Assembly: GCF_016432865.1 (NCBI RefSeq) | Contig: NC_067401.1 | Span: forward strand, 26,164,001 to 26,228,000 | Direction of reading: 5' to 3' | Source of the DNA: Antechinus flavipes | Taxonomy: Eukaryota | Length of the DNA: 64,000 nt | The notes under the pieces: generated by a model | Told to the model about the DNA's origin: nothing | The model's database searches: none | The model's input: only the letters and a program-made list of their open reading frames with translations | Part shown: positions 5,101 to 60,732 of the stretch, one piece after another | How positions within the stretch are numbered: position 1 is the first letter of the stretch | Layout of the letters: the number at the start of each line of letters is the position of its first letter | Translations under genes and position numbers: made by a program

Positions 5101-8100
5101 TGGCTGCTTTTAGATCTCAACCAAAATCCCATCTTCACAGGAAGCCTTTCTCAACCTCTCTTAATTCTAGTGTTTTTCTTTTCTTTATTATTTCCAATTT
5201 GTCATACATAAATACATACATATGTGTGTGTATGTGTATCCCTCTCTTACCTCTGCCTGTTTGTCTCTGTTTGTTGTTTCTCTGTCTCTCTTCCTCTCTG
5301 TCTCTGTCTCTATCTCTTCCTTTCTTTCTGTCTCTGAATCTCTCTGTGTCTCTCAATCTCTCTTTCTGTATCTGTCTCTCCCTCCCTTTTTCTCTACTCT
5401 CCCTTCCTTCTCCCCCCCCTGTCTCTTTGTCTCTCCCTTTCTCTCTTTTTCTGTCCCTTTCTCTCTCTCTCTGTCTTTTTCTCTCTTTCTCTCTCTCTCT
5501 CCACATGTAATTGCTTCCTTATTGTCTTTCCTATTAGATTGTGAACTCCTCAATGGCAAGAACTGTTTTTTTCCTCTTTTTCTGTGTCTATGACACTCTG
5601 TAATTGGCACCTGGTAGGTACTTAATAAATGCTTATTGACTGACCTAGCATCCTTTCCAGTGGTGGTGGGGGGAGACAAATGGTAAGGGTACGGATAGGA
5701 AGGAAAACTTTGGCAAGGATCAACTATCTCATCTTGGACAGCTCAGTGGCACAGTGGATAGAGAGCACCAGGCCTGGAGTTAAGAAGATCCGAGTTCAAA
5801 TTCAGCTTTTGACACTAGCTAGTGACTGGACAAATCCTTTGATTTCTGTCTGCCTCACTGTTTTTATCTGTAAAAAATAATAGCTCCTACCTCCCAGAGT
5901 TGTGAAGATCAAATGAGATAATTAATACAATGCTTGACTTGTAGTAAATGCTAAACAAATGTTAGCTATTATTATCTGAGACAGGAGGGAGGGGAGGTTG
6001 CATAAGGATGCAGACAGAAAAGAGGAGCTTTGAGGGAGCTCATCAGATGGCCTTGATTTTCTCAGTTGAGTAGGAGACAAGGTCATCTGCCATGTGTGTG
6101 AGAGCTCTTATTTTTAGGCGTGTACAAAAAAAGAGAAAAACGTGATATTAAAAAATGACAAAAATATTCGTACTAAAATATTCAACCCTGAGATCTACCG
6201 TGAGGCATGTGCCCTGCGGAGCTCAAAGATGGAAAGGCAGGTGCCATGTGTACCGAAAATGTCCACAGCAACAATTTGTGGTAACAAAGAACTGGAATAA
6301 AGCAGTCGCCTGTCAAATGGCAAAATGCTAAATGTGTCATGGTATGCAGGCCCATAGACCAAGAGACTGGAAGGAAATCTTGAGGTGACCAAATCTAACC
6401 CTTCCATTTTACAGTTGAGGAAACTGAGGCACAGAGTAGTTAAGTAAATTGTTCAAAGTAAAAAAAAAATAATATTAGGGCTGGGATTTGAATCCTAGTT
6501 TTCTGCTTCTTCCCTCTATAACTTACTGCTATGATGGAATATTACTGAGCCACGAGAATTTAGAGAAACTTGGAAAGATTTGCATTAAGTGATGAAGAAT
6601 GAAATACACAGAATAAGTAGGACAAAAACACAATGACTAAAATAACTTAAATAGAAAGAAAACAATAACATAATTGAATGCTGGGTAATTATGAACAAGA
6701 AAGCTTAGCCCTGGAAAAAGTTGAGAAAAATGCACTTTTCTCCCTTCTTTGCAAAGGTTAGGGATTGTGGAAACAGAAATATTGCATATATGCTGTCAAG
6801 ACTTAAGTTAATATATTGGTTTTGCTAAGCCAATTTCCCCCCTTTCTTTTTAAAAATTCTCTGTGGCAGACTATATGATGATCAATTCTGACAGACATGG
6901 CTCTCTTCAACATTGAGATGATTCAAACTAGTTGCATTTGTGCAGTGATGAAGAGAACCATCTACACCAAGAGAGAGAACCGTGGGAACAGAGTATGGAC
7001 CACAACATAGCATTCTCACTCTCTCTGTTGTTATTTGCTTGCATTTTGGTTTTTTTCTCAGTTTTTCTTTTTAATTCCTTTTTGATCTGATTTTTCCTGT
7101 GCAGCAAGATAACTGTATAAATATGTATCCATATATTGGATCTAACATATATTTCAATATATTTAATATGTATGGGACTACCTGCCACCTAGGGGTGAGG
7201 GGAAGGAGGGGAAAATTTGGAACAAAAGATTTTGCAAGGGTCATTGCTGAAAAATTACCCATGCATTAAAAAGAAAAAAAGAAAAAAAAAGGAGAGATTT
7301 GTAAAATAGACACTAAGAAAACTATTGGATTAATAAACAACAAAAACAAACAGCAATTATCAATGCTGAAAAATTACCCATGCATATATTTTGTAATTAA
7401 AAAGCTATAATAAAATTTTTTTTAAAAAAAATTACCCATGCATATGTTTTATAAATAAAAAGCTTCATAGGGGGAAGAGAAATGAATGTTTGCAAATGAA
7501 AGTTATATATATATATATATATATATGTATGTTATATATATCATACATACACACACTTATATAAATATATAATTTTTTAAAGGTCACCTATTTAGAACAA
7601 AGAGATTTCTTTTTTAAAGCAGCAAAGAAACATTGCAAGAACCAAGAACAGGCACATTTCCACATGACATTACAGTTTACAAAGTGCTTTCCTCACAACC
7701 ACCTGATAAAGCAGGTAATAATAATATATATACGGAGTCTTTTAGATGCATTTTTTTATCTTCTCTACAACCCGGTGATGTGGTTGCTATTATTATCCCT
7801 AGTTTACAGATTTGAAAACTGAGACTCAGAGAGGTTGATTGCCCAGAGTCCCACAGTTAGCATGTTCTTGAGGTAACCTTTGAACCCAGGTTTCCCTGAT
7901 TCTATCTTATCAAGCAGTTTCTCTTGAATAGAGCAAGTACGGTCATTTCTAAGATCCCTTCCATCCTTGATCCTATGACCCATGACACTATGAAATAGCT
8001 CAGAGATTTGACTTGCCCATTGTCACTTGACAGCTATTGGAACTAGGATTTTAACTCAGTTCTTCTGGCTCCAAACGTATCACTCTTTGGTACTGGGGAG

Positions 8101-11100
8101 CATCACTTGAGGGTGGGGAGCAGGTTCAAAATCAGGAAGCCCCTGCCATACTGGTAGCACTCTGGGGCAGAGAGACTCAGACGTTGCTCTTGCCTCCTTT
8201 TCATCAGAGAAGGGCTGTCGGGCACGTGGGAGCCTTCCTGAGCTCTCAGCTGTGACCAACTGTTGTGTGACAGCATCGCCCACTCAGCACATTTTCCTCC
8301 CTCCTTCCCTCATACTCCCACTGACAAGCAGATGCCAATCGAGTCAAGGGACTCACTGGGCAAGATGAATCCCAGCACCTTGGGCTAGAGGGAGAAGAGG
8401 GAGAAGAATCCAAGATCTCCACATTGGGCAGCTTGGAGGAAACCCCAGCTCTGTCTCCTCCTGCCTGTCTGCCTTCTCATGCCATCTAATATCAAGCTGC
8501 CAGCTGTTTAGCCTGCCAGCTGGCACTCACTCTTACCCTGGGTAGCCCGGCTCTTAATTAACTAGAGCAGATGGCTTCCCCGGGCTCCCCACTTGCCGCA
8601 GGCTGGGAGACAAGCTTGGTGAGGGCCAGAATTGTAATGGAAAGAGTGTCAATTTGGAGCCAAAGGACCCAAGTTCAAATCTCGACTCTGCCACTTAAAG
8701 CCTATACGCTGACTTTGGACGAGTACTTCACCTCTGTGACCCTCGTCCTTCTCCTCCTCAGATTGGTCTCTATTCCAGATTTGGGAAGTTTGTCTTTTCT
8801 CCCCACTCATCACTGCTTGAATCTCCTAGGAAGGGATGCCTTTGGGACATTTTAATGATTATTCTTGTTCCTAGAGAAGAGCTAATAAACTGTACCTTAC
8901 TCCCTTCACTGTAGAGATGGAAGATGTGGAGGAACTATGGGTGAGAAATAGTACATACATCATCAGATATGGTCAAATGTCTGTTTCGTTGAATCATTCT
9001 TGTCTCTTTAAATTTCTAGAGAGGAATATATTTGCAAATAAATATGATATGAAATCAAAAAGCATAAATAAAAAAAATATTTTTTTTTACAAAATTAAAA
9101 AGAATGAATGATTCTTGATTCTGGAGTCCCTGGGGAACAAGATCCAGGAATGAAGAAAGGTACCCAGGAGCATAACCAGAGTGATCTCCAGAGTCCTATC
9201 CACCTGCTGGGTCTGTCTGGGGTCTGAGCTTTGGACAAAGAACCCAAAATGAGGGAAAGGGGTTCCCCTGCCAATCCGGCAGCAGCGATGACTCCCTCTG
9301 GACAGAAAGCTGTTCAAGGTCCTGGCCATGCTGAAGAGCTAAGGCTTTTCCGGTCCCTGGCACATCCCCTCTTGCATCAGTCCATCGGGGGACTGGTTCC
9401 TTTCCAGGGGACTTCCTGTCAGGAAGCTAGCTCCCCCCTCGCCCCCTCCCTGCTGTGGGAAACCAAGGTCTGGGCTCTCTCACCGGTTGTACCAGCACGT
9501 TGTTCTTGCCGTAGAGCAGGTGCGTTCGAGAATTCTGATGCAGGGACTCCACGTACTCACGAGCCGAGGCTGCGAACCGGTCTTCCGACGCACTCCCGCT
9601 GGAGTGTCGTTTCCGGACCTTCAGAGAGAAGCTTTGCTAGATAGTTTTGCCCCCGAAACTCCCTGGCCTGGGCATCTGGGGCTGTCTGTGGAGAACCTGG
9701 GATGGTAGCATCCCTGGAGGGCCCCCTTTCATCCCTCCTTGACTGGCACACTGGACAGGTCTTCTCTAAGGCTCCCCTTCCACGAGCTGCAGCAGCTCTT
9801 GAACAATCTATGCTCCTGGCTCAGAGTTGACTCTCCAGCTTGGGGCTTCACCCAAGTGCTAGAGTGGGGAGAGGGTCAGTATCCTGGTGGGAAGACCCAC
9901 GTCTGCAGGAGTAATAGCAGACAGGGATCCCTTCCCCTCCTCTGAAGGGCTTTGGCTGGGGGGAAGAGGGAGGAGGGACATGGGACGCTGCAAGGAAGGA
10001 AACCTACTCCCAAGGCCGGACGCTTGGAGGGCGAGTCCTGACGGCCGTGGGGGCCCCGGATGCGGTGCCTCTGGACCAGCTCATCGGCAGATGGGTCCGT
10101 CCAATAGTGGTCTGCCGTCTTCAGCTTGGTATACTCCAGAGCGCAGGGTCCCACTGTGGGGAGAGGGACAGTCAGGATCTGAAGATAATCTCCTGGAATA
10201 GGAGCAGGAGAGCCGAAGCCCTCCCCGTCCTGGTACCCCAACCCTGCCCCACGCCCCACTCACCTAGCAGAGAGGCCAGGATGGGGCCAAACACGGGGTC
10301 CGCCAGCAGGGCTTCCTTCTCATAGTATTTGCTGTTCAAACAGAAGAGAGACAAGGGGTGAGCACAGGACCTCGGTTCGGTCACCGGCTTCCCCTCTGGA
10401 TCGAGGAAGGAGATGCGGAAGCGGGAAAACATGGAATGGCGGAGTGTGCGAGGGACTAGGAGCGAAAAAGTCGTGGCTTTGAACCTCACCTCAGACACCT
10501 CCTAGCTGTATGATCAAGGGCAATGGATCAATCATCAAGCAGCTATTAAGAGGATATGCTGGAAAAATTACCCTGGCATGGATTCTGTCAATATAAAGTT
10601 ATTATAAAATAAAATAAAAAAATATATTTTTTTTTACAAAATTAAAAAGAATGAATGATTCTTGATTCTGGAGTCCCTGGGGAACAAGATCCAGGAATGA
10701 AGAAAGGTACCCAGGAGCATAACCAGAGTGATCTCCAGAGTCCTATCCACCTGCTGGTCTGTCTGGGGTCTGAGCTTTGGACAAAGAACCCAAAATGAGG
10801 GAAAGGGGTTCCCCTGCCAATCCGGCAGCAGCGATGACTCCCTCTGGACAGAAAGCTGTTCAAGGTCCTGGCCATGCTGAAGAGCTAAGGCTTTTCCCGT
10901 CCCTGGCACATCCCCTCTTGCATCAGTCCATCGGGGGACTGGTTCCTTTCCAGGGGACTTCCTGTCAGGAAGCTAGCTCCCCCCTCGCCCTCTCCCTGCT
11001 GTGGGAAGCCAAGGTCTGGGCTCTCTCACCGGTTGTACCAGCACGTTGTTCTTGCCGTAGAGCAGGTGCGTTCGAGAATTCTGATGCAGGGACTCCACGT

Positions 11101-14100
11101 ACTCACGAGCCGAGGCTGCGAACCGGTCTTCCGACGCACTCCCGCTGGAGTGTCGTTTCCGGACCTTCAGAGAGAAGCTTTGCTAGATAGTTTTGCCCCC
11201 GAAACTCCCTGGCCTGGGCATCTGGGGCCGTCTGTGGAGAACCTGGGATGGTAGCATCCCTGGAGGGCCCCCTTTCATCCCTCCCTGACTGGCACACTGG
11301 ACAGGTCTTCTCTAAGGCTCCCCTTCCACGAGCTGCAGCAGCTCTTGAACAATCTATGCTCCTGGCTCAGAGTCAACTCTCCAGCTTGGGGCTTCACCCA
11401 AGTGCTAGAGTGGGGAGAGGGTCAGTATCCTGGTGGGAAGACCCACGTCTGCAGGAGTAATAGCAGACAGGGATCCCTTCCCCTCCTCTGAAGGCCTTTG
11501 GCTGGGGGGAAGAGGGAGGAGGGACATGGGACGCTGCAAGGAAGGAAACCTACTCCCAAGGCCGGACGCTTGGAGGGCGAGTCCTGACGGCCATGGGGGC
11601 CCCGGATGCGGTGCCTCTGGACCAGCTCATCGGCAGATGGGTCCGTCCAATAGTGGTCTGCCGTCTTCAGCTTGGTATACTCCAGAGCGCAGGGTCCCAC
11701 TGTGGGGAGAGGGACAGTCAGGATCTGAAGATAATCTCCTGGAATAGGAGCAGGGGAGCTGGAGCCCTCCCCGTCCTGGTACCCCAACCCTGCCCCACGC
11801 CCCACTCACCTAGCAGAGAGGCCAGGATGGGGCCAAACACGGGGTCCGCCAGCAGGGCTTCCTTCTCATAGTATTTGCTGTTCAAACAGAAGAGAGACAA
11901 GGGGTGAGCACAGGACCTCGGTTCGGTCACCGGCTTCCCCTCTGGATCGAGGAAGGAGATGCGGAAGCGGGAAAACATGGAATGGCGGAGTGTGCGAGGG
12001 ACTAGGAGCGAAAAAGTCGTGGCTTTGAACCTCACCTCAGACACCTCCTAGCTGTATGATCAAGGGCAATGGATCAATCATCAAGCAGCTATTAAGAGGA
12101 TATGCTGGAAAAATTACCCTGGCATGGATTCTGTCAATATAAAGTTATTATAAAATAAAATAAAATAAAAAAAAATATATATATATATAAAAAGAGGATA
12201 TGCTGGAACTTCAAGTCAAACATGAAAAGGCTTTGCCCTCAATTGATTAACAAGCATTTTAGCGTGCCTACCATGGAGGAGCCAGACACTGTGCTAGGTA
12301 GGGAAACAAAAACCAAAAATGAGACACGTCCAGCCCTCAAGGAACTTACATTCTAGCAAGCAAGTGATTTCGTTTCCCTGAATCTCCGTTTCTGCATTTA
12401 TAAGATGGGGACCATGATCCCCCAAGTACCTCTCTCACAGGGTTATTGTGAGGCTCCAAAGTCTTTTGTTAGTTTATTTTTTTTCCCCCTGAGGCAATTG
12501 GGGTTAAGTGACAGCTAGGAAGTGTTAAGTGACTGAGCAGATTTGAACTCGGGTCCTCCTGACTTCAGGGCTGGTGCTCTATCCACCGTGCCACCTTGCT
12601 GTCCCTGTTAGTTTACTTTAACCTGACATTTCTGAGGGGCACACTTCTTCCACACATCAGACACTTCTGAGCTGTGTGACCCTGGAAAAGTCACTTTACC
12701 CTATTTGCCTCAGTTTCCTCCTCTGTCAAATGAGCTGGAGAAGGAATGGCCAACCACCCCAGTATCTTTGCGGAAAAACCCAAATGGGAAGGAGACACAA
12801 CTGATCATAACAACTATGTTTTCTATTACACTTCCAGGTGGTATCTTGTCTGATACTCACAACAATCCAATGAATTACGTACTATTATTATTATCATTCT
12901 ACAGAGAAGAAAATGGGACTATGAAAGGACTTGCTCAAAGTCACACAGCCAGGAAATCTCCGAGGCAGCGTTTGACCTCAGTTCTTCCTGACTCACAGAC
13001 AATATTCTATCCCTCGCTCACTGAGCTTCCTTTAAGAGAAAGGAGAAGTAAGTGGATATTATACAGAAAGTGCTTGGAAATCCTAAGTCCTCTTAGGTTG
13101 TCCTTTAGTCAACAGCCTTGGTTGTCAGGATTGCTGAATAGCAAGAGGATCAAAACACGGTGATCGACCCAGCCCCGTGACCCAGGATTGCCAGAACTTG
13201 GGAAGAGGAGAAGGAGAAGGGGGAGAAGAAGGAGAAGATAGATGAGGAAGAAGAGCAAAAAAGAATGAGAAGGTGGGGGGGGGAAGGAGAAGAGAAAAAA
13301 GAAGATGACTTTGGTGGGTCAGAACATAAATGGGTTTAATTGTAGAAGGTTGGATGGAAGCTTTGCATCATTGGGACAGAGAGGCAGTGACATGGGAGGA
13401 GGGTGTGATGGGGGGCAGCACTCACCTGCAGTTTTCCACAATATACTGGACAACTCTGTCCAGCACTTTCTCAATGAGGGCAGTGCGCACCCAAATGTGC
13501 CTCAGGGCCTGGGGGCTGAGAGTTGGGGGCTTCCCTCCAGTTGAGCCCTGTCTCCGAAGGGCCTCCTGGTTGCCTCCTGTTGATTTCCTGAGGGGAGGGA
13601 AATGAGGCCATTCAGGGACAAGAGCAAGCCTGGGAAGAGGGTTCCTTGGGACTGGTGGCCCTGTCATGGCCTCCTTGTCTGCCAGGGGAAGATGTGGCCG
13701 AAGAGGGGACTTCACAGGGGACGAGGTTGGTGATGGATCGGAAGCTAAAGCTTCTCAGATTTCGAGCAGGTTGGGAACCTTGGAATCCAACTCCCAAGTG
13801 AGCTGGCCAGGGCTCCAGGCACAAGTGGTAGAGCTGGGACATAAAGCCAGCCTCCCACCCCTCCGTCCTTTTCCCTGGACCGTGTTTTTTCTCAGTCCTG
13901 GCCAGACCCAGTGGAGCAAAGAAAAACAAGGAGAACATTTGCCTCGCAGCCACCTGGAGAATGGCAGATGATACACAGGACCAGCTGACTTCCTAGAGGG
14001 AAAGTGGGCGAGAAAGCTAAAGGGAAGGCCCTGGAGTTGACCTGGGACTCACCTGCTCTCCACCTGCTGCTGCAGCTCCTGCACCTTTCGGCAGACCTCT

Positions 14101-17100
14101 CCGGCTACCACACAGGTCTTCCCCACCTTGGTGAAGAGGGCAGCCATCTTGTCACTGCGCAGGAAGCCCGCAGCCCGACGCCTCAGCTGATGCAGCAGGC
14201 AGGTCTCTACCACACCTGAAGAAGAGGGAAAGATGACACAAAAAGTCCACCTCTCCCCTTTTTTCATATCATTGGGATGCCGTCCACCATGACCTCTTTC
14301 ACCCGTTTCATATGAAGAGTCAGTTCTTCTCCTTGCCGACTGAACCTGCTCTCCATGGACAAGTAATTCTACCTCACTCTGTCCTCTCCACCAGACTGAC
14401 CTTCTATCATCTCATTCTCCCTCATCTTTGGTTGCTCCCTGTCCGCCGGCTGCTTCCCTACTGCCACAGACATGCCCACATCTCCCCTATCCCCCCAAAC
14501 TCTCACTTGATACGCTCATCCTGGTAATGATCATCCTACAGTTCTCCTTTGGGGGAGGGCCATCTACAATCAATGCTTTCAATTCCTTTCCTTTTACTCT
14601 CTTAACTCTCTACACTCCAGCTTCCCACATCATCATTCAACTGAAATTGCTCTATAAAATTACCAAGGATCTCTTCGTTGCAAAATCCAATGGATTTTTC
14701 TCCCAATTTTCTTCCAATTCCCCACAGCAATCTTTGATACTGTTGGCCACTCTCTCTTCCTTAAAACTCTCTTTTCTCTATGTTTTTGGGATACTACTCT
14801 TTTCTGGCTCTCCTTCTACCTTTCTGACTGTTCCTTAAGTTGAGATGTTCACCAAAGTCTTCTCTTCTAACCTTGGATGTCCCACAGGGCTCTGGCCTGA
14901 CTGTGGAGCCAGTGCTCTCTAATCACTGTGCTTAAAAAAATTAAAATGTTTTCAATTAAATATTTATCAACACTACACTTCTATCTCCCTTGTAGAAAAA
15001 GAAAGAAAAGTGAAATAAAACTCTTGTAATGAATATGCATAAAAATCCCCACATTTGCCAAAAACTATGTGATATTCTGCATCTTGAACCCATTTTCTCT
15101 CAGGAGGTGAGTGACATGTTTCATCTAGAAGTCTTCTGTAATCAGAGTTGATCTCTGCATTGATGAGCCTTCTTAAAGCTTTCTTAATCATTGTAGTTAT
15201 TGCATAAGATTTATCACATTAATATGTCATAATTTGTTTAGCCATTCCACTTTCTCCCCGGAGGAGGGAAAGGGAGGGAGGGGGGAGAAGAAGGGAAAGA
15301 AGAGGAAGAGAGGGGAGAAGGACACAGGGAAGGAGGGAGAAAGAGAAAGAGGGAGGAGAGGGGTGTGTTTTCACAGAATCTCACATTTGGAAGGGATTGC
15401 AGAGCCAAATTTTCTAACCAACATCTGACCCAAAGGTGGGCAAAACTTCTTTCCGCCCTTCTAGGCCAGGCCTGGCTGAAGCCCTGGAGAAAGGCCAGAA
15501 AACTCGTGGGTGCTTCTGGCAGTCAGTCCATAAGGATTTATTAAGTACCTATTTTTTTTTGCCAGGCATTGTGCTAAGCACAGGAGCTACAAAGAAAAGC
15601 CAAAGATAGTCCCTATTCTTAAGGAGATCACAATCTAATGGGAAACAACATGAAAACAACCATGTAGAAACAAGATTTGTACAGGATAAATGGGAGATGA
15701 TCAGCAACCGGAAGGGGTTAGCATTAAGGGAGATAAGGAAAGGCTTCTTGTAGCAGGCGGGGTTTCAGCTGGGACTTAAAAGAAGCCAAGAAGAGGAGAT
15801 GAGGAGGGAGAGAATTCCAATGAGGGAATTCCAGTATGGTCAGTGGAAGTGCATGAATGGGGCAGCTAAGTGGGGTAGTGGATAGAAGTCAGGAAGATCT
15901 GAGTTCAAATCCCAGACATTTGACTTTTTTGGACAATTTTGCCCAGACACTCTGGAAAAATCACTGGTGGGGGGAAGGGAAGACAGAGAGAGAGACAGAA
16001 AGGAGGGAAAAAGAGAAAGTGGGGGGAAGGGAGAAGGACAGAAGGAAGAAGGGAGAAAGGGGGAGAGGGAGAGAGGTGTATTTTCACAGAATCTCACACT
16101 TGGAAGCGATTGCAGAGGCAAGTTTTCCAACCCACATCTGAGCCAAAATACTCTTCGAGTCATCCCTGACTAGTCCATTTTGCTTTATCCATCACCCAAG
16201 TCAAGGACCTGTTTATAGGATTCCAGTGAAGTCGAGAGTTCATGAACTGATCCATTCTGTTTTCAGCCTGCTCCTACTGGTCTTAAGCATTAGATTAAAT
16301 GGATTCAGAGCTGGGAGGGAACCTGGGGGCCATTAGGGAACCAAACCTCAGAAAAGGGTTTGCCCCAGCTCATCCAAGTAGCAAGTGGAAGGGGTATATT
16401 TGAACCCAGACCCCTGACCCTCAATTCCGCACTCTTTCCACTGTACCACGGAGGTCTCCCTCTTGGACACTCAACTCCCATTTTCCTGCTCAGGCAGAAA
16501 CGTGCTCGGATGGAACCCAGCCCTCCCCCCGCTCATGGGGCCAGATAGCTCCATTTCTGCTGCTGCTCTATGGCAGGGTGCGCCCCCTCCACCTCCCTCC
16601 CCTTCTTCCCACAGCACATCCAACTAGCATTCGGCGACGTGGGGGCAGGGAACATGTGTGCAGAGCAGATCCGTCTCCTCTGCCTATCTGCACCTCCCCC
16701 CCTCCCCATCGAGGGGGAACATGATGGGCAGTGTCAGGACCAAGGGCACGGGGAGCAGCAGAAGCCAGCCAGGCCTCCCAGGGCCCTTGGATACTGTGGT
16801 TGCTAAGGAACCAGGCTCTGGAGAAACCATCAAATATTGATGGAGCTGATGCTGCGGTTATCAGGACTGACAACAACTCCTTCATTATTGATGAGCAGCA
16901 GCAGGGAGCAAAAGGAGGTTTCCAGGCCCTCTGGGGCTGTTTTTATAGGCTTGATTTAGGGGAAAGACCGAATTTCTCCCTCTGGACATTGCTTACCACA
17001 TGTCTTTGAAGAAATGGTGGACAGGCTAGAGGCCGGGGAGTGCACGGACTACCTTCTATCTCAATTTGTGGGTTTAAAGACTCACAGATTGTTGGATCCA

Positions 17101-19888: not shown

Positions 19889-19934
<46 letters not shown>

Positions 19935-19935
19935 T

Positions 19936-19966
<31 letters not shown>

Positions 19967-22900
19967 GTCCTATTCTTTTGGAGGAAGGATTCAAACCCAC
20001 TTCCTTTAGGAAGCCTTTCTTGACCACTCCAGCCCTCAGTGACTTCTAGTGCCATGTCAATCCAAATCACAGACTGTCTGTCCTTCATGAATGGGGAGTA
20101 TATTCTTCCTTGAGTCTAAGAGCCCTCATCTGGACCATCGATTCAAAGCTGGAACAAACCCGATCAAGTGCCCTTGATTTACGGGTGAGGAACCTGAGGC
20201 CCAGAGAGAATATAAATTCAATGCTAATAGGGATTATTTTATTCTCTTTATTTGCATCCCAGGTACCCAACACAGGTACCCAACATAATTATTACAGTTT
20301 AATCATTTCAGTCTCGTCTGACCCCATTTGGGGGTTTTCTTGGAACTGGTACTGGATTGGTTCACCATTTTTACTCCACCTTATTGTAAAGATGAGGAAA
20401 TCGAGGCAGAGTAAAGTGACCTGCTCAGGGTCACACAGCTTGTAAGTGTCCGAGGTTAGATTTGGACTCAAGTTTTCCTGATTCTGGAACCAGCATTCTA
20501 TCCCCTGTGCCACCTGACTGCCCTCGGCAATAATAGATATGCTTAAATACTTGATTGCTTGTTCCAGGTCAGGCATGTAGTTAAATAGCAAAGCTGAGAT
20601 TTGAACTTTGGTGCCTACTACCTTGGAGATAGCTGAGCAAGTCACTTAACCTCTGTTTGCCTCAGTTTCCCCAAATGTAAAATGGTAGAACCTACCTCAG
20701 GGTGCTGAACATCAAAGATAACATGTGTTATTGTCCTTAGCACAGGGTCTAGCACCATAGGTGCTTTATAAATATTTAATCCCTGCCCCCTGCCACTACT
20801 TTGGTCTTTTATTTTTGGAGGGGAGAATAAGGCAGATCCATGATGCCTTTGGTGTAGTCAACTGTCTATGAAAAAAACTCCCTCTCCAGCTCTTCAATTT
20901 ACATTTAGCAGCTGCTTGGGGGCACTAAGAGGTTAAATGACTGATTCAGAGTCATATATACCAGGCTTAACTAGAATTCAGATCTTCCCAACTTTGGGAC
21001 TGCCTTGCATGTTACCTTGTAGTCTTACTGGCCATTCATGTCTTTGTCTTGCTTCCCCAGGTATATGCAAAACTCCCAAAGCACAGGGGCTGTCCCAGCA
21101 GCCTTCTATATCCAGCACCTCCTGGAGTGTTCGGCACATCATAGGCACCCAGTGAATGTGTGCTGGGGCTCCTGGTAACTACCCGAGGCAGGAGAAGCCA
21201 CGTAGGGTCATCCTACGGGCTGCCTCTCTGGGGAAGTGTCTGGCATCACTTTTTGGGATGGAGCTAAATTTCCCAGGGAGAAGGGCTACCTGGCTCTCAC
21301 TGCCTGGCATCAAGGTCAAATTAGCCCCAGCTCTGCTTCCTACACCATGTGGGCTAAGCAGACTCGGGGGCTTCTAACATCCCCCAATAATGTTATTTCT
21401 AGAAAAGTTTCCAAGCCTGCAGGTCCTGTAGTCTGACCTACAGCAGGACAGGCTTAAAGCTTGTGAAGAAATCAATTCAAAACTTCCCTGGACATTTATT
21501 AACTGTGTGATTTAGTGAGTCACTTAATCCTCTCAGTGCCTCAGTTTTCCTATCTGCAAAATAAATGAATTTGACTCAATGATCCCTAAAGTTCCTCCCG
21601 ACTCTAAATCTAATGACTCAGATACTTGCTCTTCCTTCTGCTTCTACCCCTTCTGACCCAACCTGGTGCTGAACCTTGGTCTTAGGAGTTTTGTAGCAGT
21701 CTAGACCTGCTGAGGTAGCCCCCGGTTCGGTTCTCCAGCATAAGTCATCATCCAGCCCAATTTTAGGAGCCAAGGCAGTAAGGTGAAGAACAGGAGTCTC
21801 AAACCCACCCAATCCCAGATTTAGGAAGAAGCTAAGTTGGGCCGGGGAGACAATGCAGCATGGGACTCATGGAAGAGGATTCAGGACGCACAGAAGACCC
21901 TTCTTAATCCCTACCCATCTGCCCACACTAAGCCCAGTTCCCTTATCCAAGGTCCTGGATCAGATGTCTCAAGCCCCTGAGACGCTTCTAAGCCCCATGC
22001 TGTCCTCTATCACCATGGATCCTGCTTTGGGTTTAGAGGCTGGGATGCCGCCTTCCCTGCATCCTTTTGGGGAGAGTTTGGTGCTATGGGTGTGAAATGT
22101 TGGCTAAATTGTTATGCTTTGGTTAGCTTTGCAGACTGCTTTTTCTGCTTTGTTCATCTTTATTCTGAAGCGCACTGGTGAGGACAATGGAGAGAGAGAG
22201 ATTTGTAAATCAAGTTGATTTAAACACATAAGATATCAACAAAAAAAATGAGACTGTAAAAAATTGGGGTTTGGGGTAAAATCAGGTGATCTCATTTTGA
22301 TATCTGAGGGCCCCATCTTGGGGTATCCCAGTCTAGAAAAACTGAGGGAGGAGGCATAGAAACTCTGTTTTCTTTTCATAGTGTCCAGATGGCAGCCAGG
22401 GCTCAAGCTCTGAGCTAATAGGGAGTGGGTAAAAAGAACCTGTGGGTTGCCCTCCTTTGCCAGGCTCCTGCCCCCATCCCTGCTGCCTATGCCACAAGCT
22501 TACTCTCTGCTACCTCTAGGCATCTGCCCCCTCCCACCTGAACCCCTGGGGGAAGCTGGGCTGCAGTTGCTATAGAGATTTTCAGCTGGCTAGCCACTGC
22601 CAAGCATATGGCTCTCTACACAACTTGCTGAGAGATGGGGAGGGACAGAGGATGCTGCTACTTCTGCTAGTATCCCAGCCCATGGGGACAGCTTCATCTG
22701 CCACTGCATCCAGCACTCCTCAGGTATAGGGTCAGAGACCATCTGAGCAGAGATCCAAAGGGGCAGGACTCCTGGTTAAAATTCCCTACTGTCCATCTCT
22801 TAACTGGAGCCAAGAGTATCACGTAACTGGTAATGAGTGCTCAAGGCAAGCAGAGCTTAGCACTGGGTGGGGGAATGGTGAGCCCTGGTATCCCCATCAG

Positions 22901-25788: not shown

Positions 25789-28700
25789 TAGACCCCAACC
25801 CCTTCTGAGAATAATGTATTTTAATGCATAAAATAAAAACAAATATTTTAAATGTTAATGAACTCTAAGTATCCCTGATCAAGTCTAACCATGTTTTTTT
25901 TTTCACAGAGGAGAATTGAAAAATTCACCTGATGAGTGATAGAGAAGTGAATCCTTCTCTTTAGATTTCAGATCCATGCTTTTGTCCAGCACATAACTAC
26001 CTGCTTTTATCTGGGGAGATTTTCCTGGAAATATGCCTTCTCTGCAGTCTCATAGACATGTTCCTGTAAATGACTACTTTTTTCCTGACACAACTGGGGG
26101 TAAGTGACTTGCCCAAGTCAAATAGTATCTATGGTTGAATTTGAACACAGACCCTCCTGACTCCAAGACCAATGCTCTCTTCACTGTGCTACCTCATTGC
26201 CCTTTATAAACCAGCCACTAGAGATTGTGTACCTGGTCTTTGTGAGCAAGTGTGGAAGAGGAGAGAATGAGGAAGAGAGAAGGAGATGCTTGTAGCATGA
26301 GAGCAGGAGAGAAAACTGACATCTAGGAAAAGGGATTAGGATGTAATAGCAACTCCGTGAGCCTAGCCTGCTCAGGGGCATTGAGCCAAGGATTCAACTA
26401 CGTGTGACTTTCGAGGAAGGACTCAATGTTCAGGCCCCCGTTCCCCAGTGTAGATCAATTTTATTTGTGACCTTGAGCTGTAAGAGTTTAGACTTCTCAC
26501 TTGCCAACAGAACTGAAATCTCCTTCAGGCAAGATCTCTCCTGTGTCCTGCACAGTGGTGGGTACATTAAATGCCTTTGATAAAGTGAACTGAAAATTCA
26601 CCACTGCCCCTGCTTGAACAAGGTGCCTAGTAGTCCCTTGGAAGTGATTTTTCAGGTGACCCGTCTCGCAGCAAAACCCAGATTCTTCACCTCCACATTC
26701 TTTGCTCAAATCCATCTTTAAAATCAGCCTTGAAGCACCCAGAGAACTTTGACTTCTCAAGAAGAAAAAAAAACCCAGAAAAGTCCTTAAAACCCCCAGC
26801 TAGAATTAAAAACAAAGAGACCGGGGCCCACAATCTCAATGCCAGTGAGCTGTTTGGGAACGGACAGAGAAGGAACCTTTCATCTTCACTGTAGTGCTTT
26901 GAGGTTACCAAGTGAGCCATGTTATTTAAGGGTCATGGGGTCTGAGAGTAAATCCTTTAAGAAGAGTGGAGCTTGGTGAGCAGCCAGGATAAGAATAGCC
27001 TTTGGCAATCTCCCTCCCATCTTGATCACCTCAATCTGATGATGGTAAAGGGTCTTGAGTCCTTGCCATCTGAGGATCGTGGCATAAACTAGAGATGATT
27101 AGCTTGGAGAAGAAGAGAGTGGGGGTAGGGAATGATAGCTATCTTCCAGTAGCATTAAAGCTGTTCTATAAAAGGAAGAATTAAACTTGGACTTCCTAAA
27201 TGCCAGAAGATGGAACTGGGAGCAGCGAGTGGAAATTGCAAAGATGCAGGTTTAGGTTTGAAGTCTGAAAAAACTCCATCTGGCCCAAGTAGGATGGGCT
27301 GTTGGGAGGCAGAGGGTCTCCTGCTACCACAGGTCTCCAAGCAGAGGTCAGATGGGGATACTCTAATGGGTTTTGGTTTTCAGGTATGGATCAGACCAGG
27401 TGTGGCTGCTTAGGTCCCTTCTGGCTCTGACATTCTGGGATTTTGAGGAGTGAGATTCATGCGATACCCTGAAAATGAGTAATTCACTGAATAGGGCAGA
27501 GAAGAAAGCGGGGAGGGGGGCAGGGATGGAGGAACCTCCAATATGAAGAGGAATCCTTGCAGGGAAAAGAGAGAAAGACTCAAAACAGCCAGGAGTCCAA
27601 GACATTAAATATGAGGCAAAGACTTTGGCTTCTCAGCACAATTACGCAAGGTGGGGTGCAAACGTTCCCTCGAACCTGCTTCTCTTTTCATTTATTAGCA
27701 TCTCCTTCCCATTCCCCAGAGCCGCTCACTGCAGACTTTCCCTGTTAATGAAAGCTGCTTAGCAACAGGGAGCTGAATCATGAGACCCTGCTGTTGCTGC
27801 TGTTCCTTGGAGCCCGGGAGGACCCCCACCTCCCACTCCTATGGAGGAGGGGCACAGTCCCAGTCTGGAAGCAGTTCCAACGTTAACCCATCCTGTGATC
27901 ACGGGGAAGCATTGCGATGCCCTATGGAGGGAGCAGGAACTGAGCAACTCCAACAATCACAGACTTGGAATTGTAAAGGATCTTTAAAAAGCATCTGGGT
28001 TCTTCATCTCTGAACCAGCCTACTCTCCCTGCACCAAGGAAGCCACTCTGGGGGAGAAGGATTTCTGGAGCCTGAGGGCTGGGAGCCTCTTGGGAGCTTT
28101 CTCAGCTTCCTCTCACAGTCCACTCACCAAAGGTTAGATTTTAGCCAAATGAAATAGTAGCACAGTCCCGCCCTGTTCGGTTCAGAGGCAGAGGTGCTCC
28201 CTGAACACCGGGGAGAGGGCAGAGCAGTTTCTTTGTCTTCTCCAAAGAGCACAATTGATGCCTCATTGATTTTTGGAGTACCATGCTAGGCAGAGTGGCT
28301 AGCTATGTCATAGTTAGTGCTTGGCACACAGTAAGTAATTTGTGCTTGGAACCCTGACCTTCAGGACCTAATTCCTAAAAGGCAAGAACAGAGATAGTTT
28401 TGCATCCATCTTGGAGAGAGTGAGGCAGGAAATCCCTCAGAATGTTCAAATTAGAAAGGTGAACATCCCTNNNNNNNNNNNNNNNNNNNNNNNNNNNNNN
28501 NNNNNNNNNNNNNNNNNNNNNNNNNNNNNNNNNNNNNNNNNNNNNNNNNNNNNNNNNNNNNNNNNNNNNNNNNNNNNNNNNNNNNNNNNNNNNNNNNNNN
28601 NNNNNNNNNAGCCCCCCTCTGCTGACAAACAAAGCCTCCTTCTTCAAACAAATGTCTGTGAGCAGGAACCTGGCCAGCTTCTCCAACTGGACAGACAGGT

Positions 28701-31700: not shown

Positions 31701-34700
31701 GTCAACGCAGAGCCCGCACAAGAGATCACACAGGATCACAGATTTAGACCCAGAAGTCTCTGGAGGATGTCTACCTCAACCTCTTCAGCTTTACAATTTG
31801 GAAAATGGAGACACCAGACAGGTCGCAACTTGCTTTCTGAAGTCACACTAGTAATCAGTATCAGAGACAGGATCTGAATCCAAGATCTCTGCCTGCCTCC
31901 CCAGTCTATGACAGCTCATGGCAACCTGGGTGGTGTAGGATATAAAGAAATAACCATAAGATCCTGATCCAACCCAATAAGTATTTAAAATAATAACAAT
32001 TTATCTTTTAATTTTTTTTTTGCTGAGGCTATTGGGCTTAAGTGACTTGCCCAGGGTCACACAGCTAACAAACACAGTGTTAGTGTCTGAGGTCACATTT
32101 GAACTCAGGACCTCCTGACTTCAGGGCTTCTATCCACTGCACCAACTAGCTGTCCTGATAATTTATCATTTTAAGAGTATCTTTTAAAGTTTGCAAAATA
32201 TATAAGTTACCCTGGGAGACAGGGGCTGGATTTCTTTTGCAGATAAACAGTTAAGGCAGAAAGAGATTAAGTGACTCGCCCAGAATCACACAGTTAGGGA
32301 AGGATCTGAATTCAGGTCTTCCAGATTCTAGCTTCAGTATTCTAGCGGCTATGCCATCTACAAAGAACACTTTGTCTTTAAGGTAGATATGAGGTACCAG
32401 CTTGTGCAAAGATTAATGTTCTGGATGCTCTAAGTGCATGGAGGGAAGTGCTTCAGCATATTCTCTGCTTAGATTTAAAGGCTCAGACAGTTGCCTGGGG
32501 AGTCCATTGATTTGCCAAGGGTCACACAGTCAGAATTTGAGGCCTCTAAGATAGGTCTCTCGCCCATCTTCTCCAAAAACAAATACATGAACGATCATCT
32601 GAGGAAGGAGAGCACCCCGAGCCTGCAAAGCCTCCTGTAGGAAGTGGCCTATGGCCTGAGCCTTGAAGGAAGCTGTGGATCCCCAGAGGCAGAGATGAGG
32701 AAGGAGAGCATTCAGGGCAGCAGGAGAAGGAGGGCCAGTTCAGGAACGGTATGTGATCATGACTGGGTTCAAAGGCTGGGTTTGTGAAGTTGAGTGAATC
32801 ATTTCCTTTCTAGGGTCTCAAAGATCCTCCCTCTATAAAACAAGGGAGTTCAATAAGATGCTTTCTAAGGCCCTTTTCAGCTATATAAGGTGTGAGCTGG
32901 CTGGGGGCTGCTGAAGCAAATGGAATGGATGGGTATGTCACAAGGTCCTGGCTCTGGGCATGGTAACGGGACTGGGCTAGAAGCTAAATCTTACCAAGAA
33001 GGCCCAGGTGTCCAGCTAACCCATGACTAAGTTGGAATGGGAGCCTATTGAGCTTTGAATTTTATGCCAGTCTCTAGGCTGACATTTTTGAGTTAAAATT
33101 CTTTTATTCCATAATGGGAAAATTCTATAATTTTGCAGGAAGTTGTATTTTGCAGCTGAAAAAATGAAACACTGGAAATTGAATTAAATCCCACTTTTGA
33201 CCTTTATTATCGTGGGCAAGTCACGTGGACAGCCTGGACTTCAGTTTCCTCATTTATAAAATGGGAAAGTAAAGGTCAAATAAGGTAAATCAGGGCAAGA
33301 GTTCCCGTTAGGATTAGAGCTGGGCCGATTCCTTTCTTGTCCAAGGCCCTATTTCCTCAATCTGACTCACACATAATAAGGGAACATTATGTGTGAAAGG
33401 CAAGGTTGCAGTCATGAAGAGAGAGCCGGTCTTGGAATTAGTATGACTGGGGTTAAAAACCTGTCTCTCATGAGTAGCTGAGTCTGAACAAGTCCCAGGA
33501 TCTCTCAGTGGTCCAGGCTAACCCTGTACTGTATAGTGGGTGCTCACCCACAGCACGAGGGAGCTTCCTCACCTGGGAGTTCCCTATGTCCATGACACCA
33601 CAAACCTGATTCGAAATCCAAAAACTCCCCACTATGTGTGAGGTACTGTGTTGGGCACAGTGCAAGCAGAGACAGCTAAACATGGAAGGGGCCAGCTTAA
33701 TACCTTTCCAAGTTAATTGAATCAGAGCTGATGTAATTTTCCCTCAGCAAACATTATAGATTACAATCAGTCCTCTGTGTGACTTACTATGTGAAGGGCC
33801 TGGGAAAACATTCGTCTTCAAAAGATAGGGGCAGAAGTTAAGAGTCTCAGAAACCTACCATGAGCTTCAAAGAGCCAAAGATCTGGGAAAAAACAATTTT
33901 TTCTCTCTTGCTTCCACGCTTCAAAGGAAAGATCTTGGATTTGCAGTCTCGGGACCCAGGTCTGGATCCCAGCACTGTCATGATAAGTGGTGTTAACTTA
34001 GGCAAGTCACTTCCCTTTGGGGAGCCCCACCTGTAAAATGAGGAGGGGGTTGGGCTGGATGGCCTGACTTGCTTCCTAGTTCTAAATCCTACAATTTGAT
34101 TAATAGCTGATCATTTCTGTCCAGTTCTCTTAAACGCACTCATTTTTTTTTGGTTGTCCTTGAGACAAGTAGGGTTAAATGACTTGCCCAGTAAATTAGT
34201 AAAATAATAAGTATCTGAGGGATTTGAATTTAGGGATTCCTGATTCCAGATCATTGCCCCACGTAGCTGCTCCCCTCACTCGTCAGCTACGGTGAAAAGC
34301 TGCCTAGCTCCTTGCTACTTGTTCCCGAGGATTTAGGAAGAACAAACTTTCAGGAAATCTAAAGTAAATTCAGCTTAGAGGTTTTAGTTTTGATCCATTC
34401 AGAGGCAGAAAGGTTCTGGGTTTACCTCGATCNNNNNNNNNNNNNNNNNNNNNNNNNNNNNNNNNNNNNNNNNNNNNNNNNNNNNNNNNNNNNNNNNNNN
34501 NNNNNNNNNNNNNNNNNNNNNNNNNNNNNNNNNNNNNNNNNNNNNNNNNNNNNNNNNNNNNNNNNNNNNNNNNNNNNNNGGTGAGGGTAAGAGAACTGAA
34601 TTGAAGAATAAAAGAATGGAAGAGCATCAGAAAAAATAATCACCAGGCTACGCCAAGTAGTCACTGCTGAATAAGGACAAGCTGAAAGATGCTTAAAGGC

Positions 34701-37700
34701 AGCTCCAGGGAACAATTCCACTTTGCCCATGACTCCAAAATCATGGGTTCAAATTTTGCCTCTGCCTCTGTACTAGTTACTCATTCACCTAATCAGCGAA
34801 TCTTTGTTAAGCACCTCTTATGTGCCAGGCCCGGTTCTAGGGGTACAGATAAAACAGTGAGTCATTCCATTCCTTTTGCCCACAAAGATCCGCTCTCTCA
34901 TATACGCAGCCCCTGTCACTCACCACACAGAGCAATGATATGGCTGCTGTCTTCATGCACAAACTTCCTGGTGACGGCTTCCTCCATGATCTGCTTTACC
35001 TAGGAACAAATGAAGCTCTCTGTCAGTCTTTCTTAGCCAGAGAAGTCCCAAAGACCCTTGTCACTGACAGGACATCCCAGTGGGCACATGGCAGACTGTC
35101 AAATCTCCCTCCATATACAAAGCAGTTGGTGAAACAGTGGCCTATCTTCCTCCATCAGTAGGCTCTTCCAGACTTGGGGTTCCCCTGGATCTGGGAGGGA
35201 CTCTTATTTCCTAGGGGATTGTGGTTACAACTCATCAAGCTGTCAATGGCTCATCAGTCAACAAGTATTAATCGCCTATTATGTGCCAGGCCCTGGGCAT
35301 GCAGAGATTGGCAAATAAGAACACTGCCTACCTTTAAGGAGGTTACTGTCTAACTGGTCTCATTTCTGGGAGTTCTTGGATCTTAGTAGGGAGAGGGTTA
35401 TAAGTCAAATGAATGAATTATAGACTAGTGAGAGTGATACCCATTTTGTCAGAGTAGGCAGGACATTAACAAATGTCTGGTCCTGCCTACAAAAGGACTT
35501 TTTTTGTTTGGTTTTGTTTAAGCTTGAGACTTCTCTTAGTGAGAGGCAAGGTAAAGTTTCCCAGAACCAGTTACTTCTAAAGGCTCTACAGGTGGATGTG
35601 AATCACTTCAGGGTTAATCCAGGACACGTGGGATGCCTTGCACCTGTGTGTCTCCTCACACTTCCTCACACTTGTTTGGAAACCACTCACCTTGATTAGA
35701 ACTCATCCATTAAGGAAACAGTAGAAAGAAAGAATGATGGATTGGAAGTCAAGAAGACCTAGATTTGAATACCAATCTTTGCCACTAAATAACTGTGATG
35801 TTGGGCAAGTCATTAGCCTCTCTGGGCCTCAGTTTCCTGATCGGTAAAATGGAGAGGGTTGGACTAAATGGCCTCCCGGTTCACTTTCGGCTCTAAATCT
35901 ATGATCCTATAATGGTCTGGCTAGACATCTTTATCTCCGTCACCTGACAAACCTCCCCAAGTTTCAGCATTGTCCAAATATAGCTTGGGTAGCCTAGGCT
36001 CTTTGTCCTACTTTGCTTTTTTACCACTGTGTCCTGCTTCCCATACCACCCGGCCCATCTCCCCCGAGAACGGATTTTGTTTTCTACTTGTGAGCTGGTT
36101 TTCTTTATTTCCCCTGGGTAAGATTCAGTTGGTCATCAGCCTGCTTGTCTGGGGATCTGGCGTCTTTAATGTCTTCCTGGCTATGTTCATCCAGGTGCAT
36201 TTGGGAATCTCCTCACTAATAGGAGAAACCAGTATATTCAATATTTCAGGGCAAGGATTGTCTTTGCCTTTCTTTGTACCTATCTATCAAGCACTATAGT
36301 GGAGTGCCTAGCACATAAGAAACCCTTAACAAATACTTGTTGACTCTATATCTAGTCTCTCTCAGTCAGCCAAAGGAGNNNNNNNNNNNNNNNNNNNNNN
36401 NNNNNNNNNNNNNNNNNNNNNNNNNNNNNNNNNNNNNNNNNNNNNNNNNNNNNNNNNNNNNNNNNNNNNNNNNNNNNNNNNNNNNNNNNNNNNNNNNNNN
36501 NNNNNNNNNNNGAAGGGAAAGGGGAAGTCTTTATAAGAAGTGGTATCCCTACTCCAAAGACCCCCAGACCAGTCTACCTTGGGTCCTGAAATTGGCTGCC
36601 ACATCAAGCTTCCTGAAGTCTGGCACAGAGCTCAGCATCCTTCCTCCCCCAAGTTCCCCTTTCCTTTTAGGCTTTGGAAACTCTTTTCACTAGGGGCATT
36701 TCCTCTTATGGAATTGGGGTGTGTGGGTGTGGGGATATATGTGGTTCCAAGACAGGGCCCCAAAGCCAGGAGGAAGTCAAGAAGGATGCAGAGAAAGGGG
36801 CTCCCGTTGGCTTGGGTAGAATAATAAATGCTTCTGGGTTAACTGGACATTTTAGAAATGAACCCCTTAAAGGAAGAGAACATGGCAGGGCAGCTAAGAC
36901 ACTTCCAAGGGAGAGAGAATCACACTGATGGAAGGGGGAGGGGGACATCGGATAGCCACCGGGAATAGAAGAGGTCAGAGTGGCAAGGCAGAAGGAAACT
37001 GGGAAGGGGGGTGGGGTGGGGGAGCTCTAGTAGGAAAGTACAGGCGTTTCCTTCCACTGAAAATATAGACGATCGGGCGGGTTTTTCTCAGGCAAGAATC
37101 GGGCAGTAGCTTGGCTTAAGGGAATGGGAGGAGGGACAATCTGTCTGGGTGGGGAAAACCTTTCTGTAGCAAAGTCCTTCGTCCCGTGAGCGGGTGCGGG
37201 GGTGGGGTGGGGGCGAGGAGCAGGACGAGATAGGCATCCAACTTCTATAACCCTCGAGCCCCAGAGCTGGGGCTGGTGCCCTGAATTGCCCCGGTACCCC
37301 AGGGAATCCAAAGAGAAACCCCGCCCCCGTACCTCTCTCCTGCAGGGCTTCAGATGAATGAATAGTATCTCTCTCCCTCCCCCCCCCCCCAGCCCCAATC
37401 TCCCTTCCAGAGGAACAACCATCGCTCCCCCTCCCACTCCCCCACCCCGTTCCCCAGGCTGCTGCTGCCGTCATAGGGTGGGGAGCTGCAGGGACCGCGG
37501 AGAAAACAAGCACGGGGGAACACTGGGAGAGACTCCCCCCTCTCGGGGAGGGTCCTCCCAAATAAAGAGGGTCCCTCCAAAGCAAGAAGGGGGCCCTAAA
37601 GTAAGGGACCACCCCGAGCTGGCCCTTTTGGATGTCCTACTCTCCCACCCACGCTAGGTTTGTTGGGGAGCACCCACTGGGACCCCGGGACTGGGCTCCT

Positions 37701-38950: not shown

Positions 38951-39316
38951 CCAGCAATGAGACATACAGGATTGCTTGTGCCGGAAGAGACTGTAGAGAC
39001 TGACCCACTTTACAGAGGCGGAAACTGAGGTGAAGGGACTTGTGTCAAATCTAAGCCATTGGCTTCGATCCAGTTCCAGAAGTTAGAGGAGAGGAGCTTA
39101 GACTGAGGAGCTTTTCCCTTGGCTGAGCCAGATTCCTTTTGTTTTAAGTGAGAGAGATCTAGAAAATTGAGAGGTTTTTTTTTTTTTTTTTGCCTTGTGG
39201 CATTCAGCCTGGCACATAGTGGTGGATTAATCGATTCTTTTATTTATTTAATATTTTCCTTAGTTACATTCAAAACAAGAAAAAAAGCTTACTTTTGTTT
39301 TTAAATTTGAGTGCTA

Positions 39317-39470
39317 GGGGCAGCTAAGTGGTGCACTGGATAGAGCATCAGCCCTGAAGTCAGGAGGACCTGAATTCAAATCCAGCCTCAGACACCGATC
39401 ACTTCCTAGCTGTGTGACCCTGGGCAAGTCACTTAATCCCAACCGCCTCAGTAAAAAAAAAAAAAAAAAA
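39317..39470 (+). mobile_element. WSINE1-type SINE between SGSM2 and TSR1 promoters
   Basis: GGGGCAGCTAAGTGGTGCACTGGATAGAGC...GAATTCAAATCC (A/B-box-like)...GCCTCAGT followed by an A19 tail. Confidence 0.9.
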
Positions 39471-60601: not shown

Positions 60602-60732
60602 NNNNNNNNNNNNNNNNNNNNNNNNNNNNNNNNNNNNNNNNNNNNNNNNNNNNNNNNNNNNNNNNNNNNNNNNNNNNNNNNNNNNNNNNNNNNNNNNNNN
60701 NNNNNNNNNNNNNNNNNNNNNNNNNNNNNNNN
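60602..60732. other. Assembly gap (N run) in the SRR/SMG6 promoter
   Basis: N run next to a (GCGT)n/(GT)n repeat. Confidence 1.

What the first reader, a model, noticed from the sequence alone, without database searches (positions are those of the whole stretch)
9066..12180. Recent tandem duplication of SGSM2 exons 5-7 (~1546-bp unit, ~99% identical)
Seen: the block holding exons 5, 6 and 7 (end of the RUN domain and following linker) with their introns occurs twice in tandem, with every splice site intact in both copies. I count ~12 substitutions and one 1-bp indel; the single exonic change is synonymous (10047 vs 11593). Established: human SGSM2 has these exons once, as I recall. Inference: this is either a real young intragenic duplication or CNV, or two alleles assembled in tandem. 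About 0.8% divergence is compatible with either, and the N gaps suggest a fragmented short-read assembly.
Basis: partly seen in the sequence, partly recalled or inferred. Interest (0 to 1): 0.75.

Follow-up and report, generated by a model that had tools for sequence, protein, structure and literature searches.

The report
Frame-breaking three-exon duplication in SGSM2
A 1.5-kb piece of the marsupial SGSM2 gene holding three coding exons stands twice in a row at 99% identity; using both copies in the message would break the reading frame, and I could not test with sequencing reads whether the doubling is real or an assembly error.

Summary
Window 9066-10622 and 10612-12169 are head-to-tail copies, 99.0% identical, and they are the only long repeat in the 64 kb. 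The gene runs on the minus strand. Pfam hits on its other exons (RUN, Rab-binding domain) and its neighbours TSR1 and SRR make it SGSM2. The unit holds coding exons 5-7 (68, 146 and 135 nt). All splice sites are identical in both copies, and the one exonic difference is synonymous.

- The three exons add up to 349 nt, which is 1 more than a multiple of 3. Splicing in both sets gives ...VLVQP-QIL-stop, ahead of the Rab-binding and GAP domains.
- The junction is gapless and sits in about 14 nt of A-rich microhomology. One breakpoint lies in the A-tail of a short retroposed piece with 17-nt target-site repeats.
- Ten of the 12 differences are transitions and four touch CpG sites, so both copies are natural sequences.

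Earlier scan notes name the genome as the yellow-footed antechinus, which I did not check. That assembly is a PacBio one with contig N50 51.8 Mb, not a fragmented short-read one.

My odds are about 0.6 for a real structural variant, which may be heterozygous, and about 0.3 for an assembly artefact. Either way it is an ordinary kind of event.

The parts
9066..10611 (-). Copy 1 of the tandem unit (downstream copy in the transcript); BLAST extends it to 10622 because of the shared A-rich tract
10612..12169 (-). Copy 2 of the tandem unit (upstream copy in the transcript)
10612..10636 (.). Gapless junction: AAAT-A7-TATA-T9, a clean hybrid of the right-edge tract (AAAT-A9-(TA)7 at 12163-12189) and the left-edge tract (AAAT-A8-TA-T9 at 9066-9088). 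About 14 nt of microhomology.
   Evidence: read directly
10264..10331 (-). Exon 5, copy 1 (68 nt; starts with the third base of a Ser codon; ...[23 protein letters not shown])
10008..10153 (-). Exon 6, copy 1 (146 nt); the synonymous CAC/CAT difference is at 10047
9484..9618 (-). Exon 7, copy 1 (135 nt; ends on a complete codon, ...NNVLVQP)
11810..11877 (-). Exon 5, copy 2, identical to copy 1
11554..11699 (-). Exon 6, copy 2, one synonymous difference (11593)
11030..11164 (-). Exon 7, copy 2, identical to copy 1
10332..11029 (-). New 698-nt chimeric intron between exon 7 (copy 2) and exon 5 (copy 1). It has an intact GTGAGA donor and an intact pyrimidine tract plus AG acceptor. Using it shifts the frame to QIL-stop.
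12094..12208 (+). Short retroposed piece with an A-rich tail between 17-nt direct repeats AAGAGGATATGCTGGAA (12094 and 12192; the first repeat also stands at 10548 in copy 1). The right breakpoint lies in its tail.
13427..13590 (-). Exon 4 (approximate 5' limit), ending ...VVQYIVENC plus AG, then gt; it supplies the first two bases of the Ser codon
3225..3348 (-). Exon 8 ([15 protein letters not shown]...), starts on a complete codon, Pfam PH_RBD

Best explanation
This is a real tandem duplication of 1546 bp inside SGSM2, present on at least one chromosome of the sequenced animal. It arose by unequal exchange or a replication template switch between two A-rich tracts that share about 14 nt. 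One tract is upstream of the unit; the other is the A-tail of a short retroposed piece at its end. The unit carries coding exons 5-7 with all their splice signals. Exon-by-exon recognition should therefore splice all six exons in, through a new 698-nt chimeric intron. The three exons total 349 nt, so the frame shifts at the exon 7 to exon 5 joint and stops after three codons (...VLVQP-QIL-stop). That message should be destroyed by nonsense-mediated decay, or would encode only the RUN part without the Rab-binding and RabGAP domains. A normal message needs one full set of three consecutive exons to be skipped. So I read it as a loss-of-function or weakened allele, more likely polymorphic or heterozygous than fixed (my split: about 0.45 polymorphic, about 0.17 fixed). 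The 0.8% difference between the copies need not mean an age of 1-2 million years, because an unequal crossover between two different haplotypes of a diverse species gives that divergence at once. Shown here: the repeat, the junction, the exons, the splice sites and the frame arithmetic. Inferred: that the duplication is real, the splicing outcome, the decay of the message, and the population status.
For: The two copies are contiguous with no N between them, and the nearest N run is 16 kb away. The junction is an exact hybrid of the right-edge and left-edge tracts, with nothing added or lost, inside about 14 nt of shared A-rich sequence. The 17-nt target-site repeat stands at 10548, 12094 and 12192. 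So the retroposed piece came first and the breakpoint fell in its tail, which is a coherent biological history. The differences are 10 transitions to 2 transversions, four touch CpG sites, and one site reads TG in one copy and CA in the other. That is a natural mutation pattern, not read error. If the genome is the antechinus assembly, it was built from 100x PacBio reads with wtdbg2 and has contig N50 51.8 Mb, so single reads span the whole 3.1 kb. From my own knowledge, that assembler merges 99%-alike haplotypes and does not keep them apart. Of the published hallmarks of false duplications (PMC9516828), the only one testable here, a gap between the two copies, is not met.
Against: A frame-breaking duplication in a conserved, widely expressed gene of a reference animal is the kind of result that often turns out to be an assembly error. 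The 0.8% divergence equals what two alleles could show in a species reported as far more heterozygous than the Tasmanian devil. No haplotig purging is described for that assembly. The unit length, 1546, lies within 10 bp of six 256-bp bins of wtdbg2; such closeness to a multiple of 256 has a chance of about 8%, so this is a weak flag. The species name rests on earlier scan notes that I did not verify.
Confidence: 0.62

Rival explanations
1. Assembly artefact (false heterotype duplication). The animal has exons 5-7 once, its two alleles differ by 0.8% over this stretch, and the assembly or polishing laid them head to tail, joining them in the low-complexity A/T tract. SGSM2 is then intact and nothing biological happened.
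For: The 0.8% divergence with a natural mutation pattern fits alleles as well as paralogues. Heterozygosity is reported as high in small dasyurids. No purging step is described. The result is out of frame in a conserved gene. Low-complexity tracts at both edges are places where assembly graphs and local reassembly go wrong. The unit length is close to 6 x 256 bp.
Against: There is no gap between the copies, whereas gaps between the pair are a listed hallmark of same-scaffold false duplications. No other such repeat exists in the 64 kb. A long-read assembler working on 256-bp bins cannot separate 99%-alike haplotypes, and a 14-nt match cannot drive a false join in it (own knowledge of wtdbg2, not tested). 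A blunt layout error would not give an exact microhomology junction.
Confidence: 0.3
2. A real, old and fixed duplication that the species tolerates because splicing regularly skips one whole set of three exons (for example exon 4 straight to copy 1, or exon 7 of copy 2 straight to exon 8). Under this reading SGSM2 stays functional and the 0.8% divergence reflects roughly 1-2 million years.
For: Downstream exons 8-10 in the window are intact and match the Rab-binding domain strongly (E 2.8e-18). Only one exonic difference is seen where 2.7 are expected, which is not significant. Four different three-exon skips would each restore a normal message (phase arithmetic).
Against: Both sets have identical, consensus-like splice sites, so nothing marks one set for skipping. 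About 1 million years is too short for decay of downstream exons to show, so their intactness proves little. There are no RNA data.
Confidence: 0.17

Closest known systems
Out-of-frame intragenic multi-exon tandem duplications known as disease alleles (for example exon duplications in DMD or BRCA1; own knowledge)
   Same: A head-to-tail copy of a few exons with their introns, breakpoints in intronic repeats or microhomology, all splice sites kept, and a frame broken when the summed exon length is not a multiple of 3.
   Different: Here it is found in a reference assembly of a wild marsupial. Its zygosity, frequency and RNA outcome are unknown, and the copies already differ by 0.8%.
False heterotype duplications in genome assemblies (Ko et al. 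2022, PMC9516828)
   Same: Two nearly identical neighbouring copies of exons whose divergence is within the range of heterozygosity, in an unphased assembly with no purging described.
   Different: There is no gap between the copies, and the junction is seamless inside a very long contig. The other hallmarks (half depth, 1-copy k-mers, discordant pairs) could not be tested.
SGSM2 / RUTBC1, a RUN and TBC domain RabGAP for Rab32/Rab38 (PMC7308992)
   Same: RUN domain and Rab-binding domain hits on the flanking exons, and the gene order SGSM2-TSR1-SRR as at human 17p13.3 (the human map is from my own knowledge).
   Different: The TBC domain lies outside the window. The exon 5-7 block stands twice here.

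Membership tests
True intragenic tandem duplication | Two head-to-tail copies, contiguous, far beyond chance | tested here: met
   99.04% over 1559 columns, the only long repeat in the window, no N at the junction
True intragenic tandem duplication | A junction explicable by a known mechanism (microhomology or repeat at both breakpoints) | tested here: met
   About 14 nt of A-rich homology shared by the left edge, the junction and the right edge; the right edge lies in a retroposon tail with 17-nt target-site repeats
True intragenic tandem duplication | Flank-level read depth on both copies and reads crossing the junction | not testable with these tools
True intragenic tandem duplication | Seen in a second individual or a related species | not tested
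False heterotype duplication (Ko et al. 2022) | Gap between the duplicated pair on the same scaffold | tested here: not met
   No N within 16 kb of the junction; criterion from PMC9516828
False heterotype duplication (Ko et al. 2022) | Half read depth on each copy, 1-copy k-mers, discordant pairs | not testable with these tools
False heterotype duplication (Ko et al. 2022) | Divergence between the copies within the species' heterozygosity | tested here: inconclusive
   0.8% between the copies. Heterozygosity is reported only as far above the devil's, measured on a foreign reference.
SGSM2 (RUTBC1) | RUN domain in the N-terminal exons | tested here: met
   PF02759, E 1.5e-07, on exon 3
SGSM2 (RUTBC1) | PH-like Rab-binding domain after the linker | tested here: met
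   PF12068, E 3.7e-07 and 2.8e-18, on exons 8 and 10
SGSM2 (RUTBC1) | C-terminal TBC RabGAP domain | not testable with these tools
   The 3' part of the gene lies beyond position 1 of the window
SGSM2 (RUTBC1) | Conserved neighbours that tell it from SGSM1 | tested here: met
   TSR1 (RIBIOP_C, + strand, 40.1-49.0 kb) head to head, then SRR (PALP, - strand, 49.1-57.8 kb). The match to human 17p13.3 is from my own knowledge.

The most novel reading that the evidence does not exclude
The duplication is real and common or fixed in the species, and SGSM2 is either on its way to loss or is rescued by regular skipping of a whole three-exon set. That would make it a natural case of how splicing chooses between two identical exon cassettes, in a species studied for its programmed male die-off.
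Probability: 0.15. Interest if true: 0.45.

Novelty: new member of a known kind. Interest (0 to 1): 0.25.

Why it matters
If real, this is a natural knock-out or weakened allele of a RabGAP that acts on Rab32/Rab38 in the trafficking of pigment-making enzymes to melanosomes (PMC7308992). It sits in the reference animal of a marsupial ageing model, and gene annotation would hide it by picking one copy of each exon. If it is an artefact, it is a useful warning that seamless false exon duplications can sit inside very long contigs of an unpurged long-read assembly. In either case it is a small, ordinary event, and its main use is for annotation quality.

Tried and rejected
Gene identity was taken from exons beside that stretch.
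The exons were joined only inside a local script, to count the frame.
- The large protein searches, structure prediction and complex prediction were not used. They could not bear on real versus artefact, and the Pfam scans settled the gene.
- Tandem Repeats Finder missed the repeat because its longest period is 500.
- Searches of the scan's earlier notes found nothing on this place. They did find several other young tandem duplications noted in the same genome, none with a read test I could use as a base rate.
- I rejected read error as the source of the differences because of the transition and CpG pattern.
- I rejected the N runs as evidence for a short-read assembly. The N runs were neither filled nor looked up.
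- An excess of intronic over exonic differences is not significant: 1 seen against 2.7 expected.
Full report
**Observation**

A self-comparison of window 7000-14500 gives one strong direct repeat, 9066-10622 against 10612-12169. It is 99.04% identical over 1559 columns, with 12 mismatches and 3 gap openings. The spacing is 1546/1547.

A global alignment lists 12 internal substitutions, one more at the very edge (9076/10623) and a 1-bp indel at 9209. The A/T tracts at the edges also differ in length. A self-comparison of the whole window finds no other long repeat of 90% identity or more. The four N runs lie at 28471, 34433, 36379 and 60602, at least 16 kb away.

**The gene**

The reading frames that look like protein lie on the minus strand.
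- Exons outside the repeat match the Pfam RUN domain (exon 3, E 1.5e-07).
- They also match the Rab-binding PH_RBD domain (exon 8, E 3.7e-07; exon 10, E 2.8e-18).
- Upstream of the gene's 5' end, on the + strand, are TSR1 exons (RIBIOP_C, E 2.4e-17 and 2.6e-13).
- Beyond those, on the minus strand, are serine racemase exons (PALP).

From my own knowledge, this order (SGSM2 and TSR1 head to head, then SRR) is that of human 17p13.3. It separates SGSM2 from its paralogue SGSM1.

The only joined reading was a local frame count.

**Anatomy of the unit**

On the minus strand the exons are:

| Exon | Copy 1 | Copy 2 | Length |
|---|---|---|---|
| 5 | 10264-10331 | 11810-11877 | 68 nt |
| 6 | 10008-10153 | 11554-11699 | 146 nt |
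| 7 | 9484-9618 | 11030-11164 | 135 nt |

The 20 nt before each acceptor and the 8 nt after each donor are identical in the two copies. The single exonic difference is CAC against CAT (His), which is synonymous.

The three exons add up to 349 nt, which is one more than a multiple of three.
- Exon 4 ends with two bases of a codon (…VENC plus AG).
- Exon 5 starts with the third base of that codon.
- Exon 7 ends on a complete codon, and exon 8 starts on one.

If both sets are spliced in, the joint of exon 7 (copy 2) to exon 5 (copy 1) reads …VLVQP-QIL-stop. The new intron between them is 698 nt long and keeps an intact donor and an intact acceptor with its pyrimidine tract. I therefore expect, by inference, that all six exons are recognised.

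That message has an early stop many exons before the end, so nonsense-mediated decay should remove it. Anything translated would lack the Rab-binding and RabGAP parts. A normal message needs three consecutive exons to be skipped, and four such skips are possible.

**The junction**

The three edges read as follows.
- Left edge: AAAT-A8-TA-T9-ACAAAATT (9066-9096).
- Right edge: (ATAAA)n-A9-(TA)7 (12150-12189).
- Junction: (ATAAA)n-A7-TATA-T9-ACAAAATT (10600-10643).

The junction is therefore an exact hybrid. The exchange happened inside about 14 nt shared by both edges, with nothing added or lost.

The 17-mer AAGAGGATATGCTGGAA stands at 10548 and 12094 (the same place in each copy) and once more at 12192, just after copy 2. 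It brackets an 81-nt piece that ends in the A-rich tail. I read this as a short retroposed fragment with target-site repeats. It was there first, and the right breakpoint fell in its tail.

**Nature of the differences**

Ten of the 12 substitutions are transitions and four touch a CpG. One site reads TG in one copy and CA in the other, as expected if a CpG decayed separately in each. These are natural variants, not read errors. Both sequences therefore exist in the animal, either as two paralogues or as two alleles. Exonic differences (1 seen, 2.7 expected) are not significantly rare.

**The assembly**

Earlier notes of this scan call the genome the yellow-footed antechinus and count seven pieces. 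I treat this as a lead and did not verify it.

According to its paper, that genome was built as follows:
- 100x PacBio reads, corrected with canu and assembled with wtdbg2;
- polishing with pilon, using 50x short reads;
- scaffolding with 3D-DNA;
- a result of 1107 contigs and contig N50 51.8 Mb, with no purging step described.

Four N runs in 64 kb can hardly be gaps of such an assembly.

The same paper reports heterozygosity far above the Tasmanian devil's, so 0.8% is possible for two alleles.

**Weighing real against artefact**

The published hallmarks of false duplications are half depth, a gap between the pair, discordant pairs and 1-copy k-mers (PMC9516828). Only the gap can be tested here, and it is absent.

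Points in favour of a real variant:
- Long reads span the whole 3.1 kb.
- From my own knowledge, wtdbg2 merges haplotypes that are 99% alike, and a 14-nt match cannot drive a false join in it.
- A blunt layout error would not give a clean microhomology junction.

Points in favour of an artefact:
- A frame-breaking change in a conserved gene of a reference animal is suspicious in itself.
- The copies differ by about what alleles might.
- No purging was done.
- The unit length lies within 10 bp of six 256-bp bins of wtdbg2. Such closeness to a multiple of 256 has a chance of about 8%, so it is a weak flag.

I put a real structural variant on at least one haplotype at about 0.62 and an artefact at about 0.30. 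Within the real case I favour a polymorphic, possibly heterozygous allele. It may have formed by unequal crossover between two different haplotypes, which would explain 0.8% divergence without any great age. A fixed, tolerated duplication seems less likely.

**What could not be done**

**Comparison with what is known, and verdict**

Out-of-frame multi-exon tandem duplications with breakpoints in intronic repeats are a well-known class of gene-breaking variant. False exon duplications are a well-known class of assembly error. This case is a new member of one of those two ordinary kinds.

SGSM2/RUTBC1 is a GAP for Rab32/Rab38 in the trafficking of pigment-making enzymes to melanosomes (PMC7308992), so a real allele would be a natural loss-of-function or weakened allele. 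Interest is low to moderate. The main practical value is as a flag for annotation and assembly quality, and the experiment that settles it is simple and cheap.

Noticed in passing
window 37000-40400: A GC-rich stretch that looks like a CpG island, though I did not measure its composition. It lies between SGSM2 exon 1 (about 37747, minus strand) and the TSR1 start ([14 protein letters not shown]..., about 40180, plus strand): a head-to-head gene pair that probably shares a bidirectional promoter.
   Followed up: partly
window 40100-49020 (+) and 49155-57762 (-): TSR1 exons (RIBIOP_C) on the plus strand and serine racemase exons (PALP) on the minus strand, tail to tail. This gene order matches the human SGSM2 neighbourhood.
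   Followed up: partly
window 28471-28609, 34433-34579, 36379-36511, 60602-60732: Four N runs of 131-147 nt, three of them inside SGSM2 introns 1-2. They are too many and too short to be Hi-C scaffold gaps of an assembly with contig N50 51.8 Mb, so they are probably masked on purpose. Not filled or looked up.
   Followed up: no
window 12094-12208: An 81-nt retroposed fragment with an (ATAAA)n-A9-(TA)7 tail, between perfect 17-nt target-site repeats. Its source element was not identified.
   Followed up: partly
window 19890-19967: A (TA)-rich microsatellite that matches its own reverse complement (self-BLAST minus-strand hits, 94-97%).
   Followed up: no
window 5138-5742 and 61052-62137: Long open frames whose translations are simple and repetitive (R/E/K-rich at 5138-5742, P/S/L-rich at 61052-62137). 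I took them for simple-sequence DNA, not for genes.
   Followed up: no
same genome, other windows (scan notes s1-200962, s1-196649, s1-215354, s1-217931): Several other very young tandem duplications inside genes are noted in this assembly. A read-depth survey of all of them would show whether the assembly or the species produces them.
   Followed up: no
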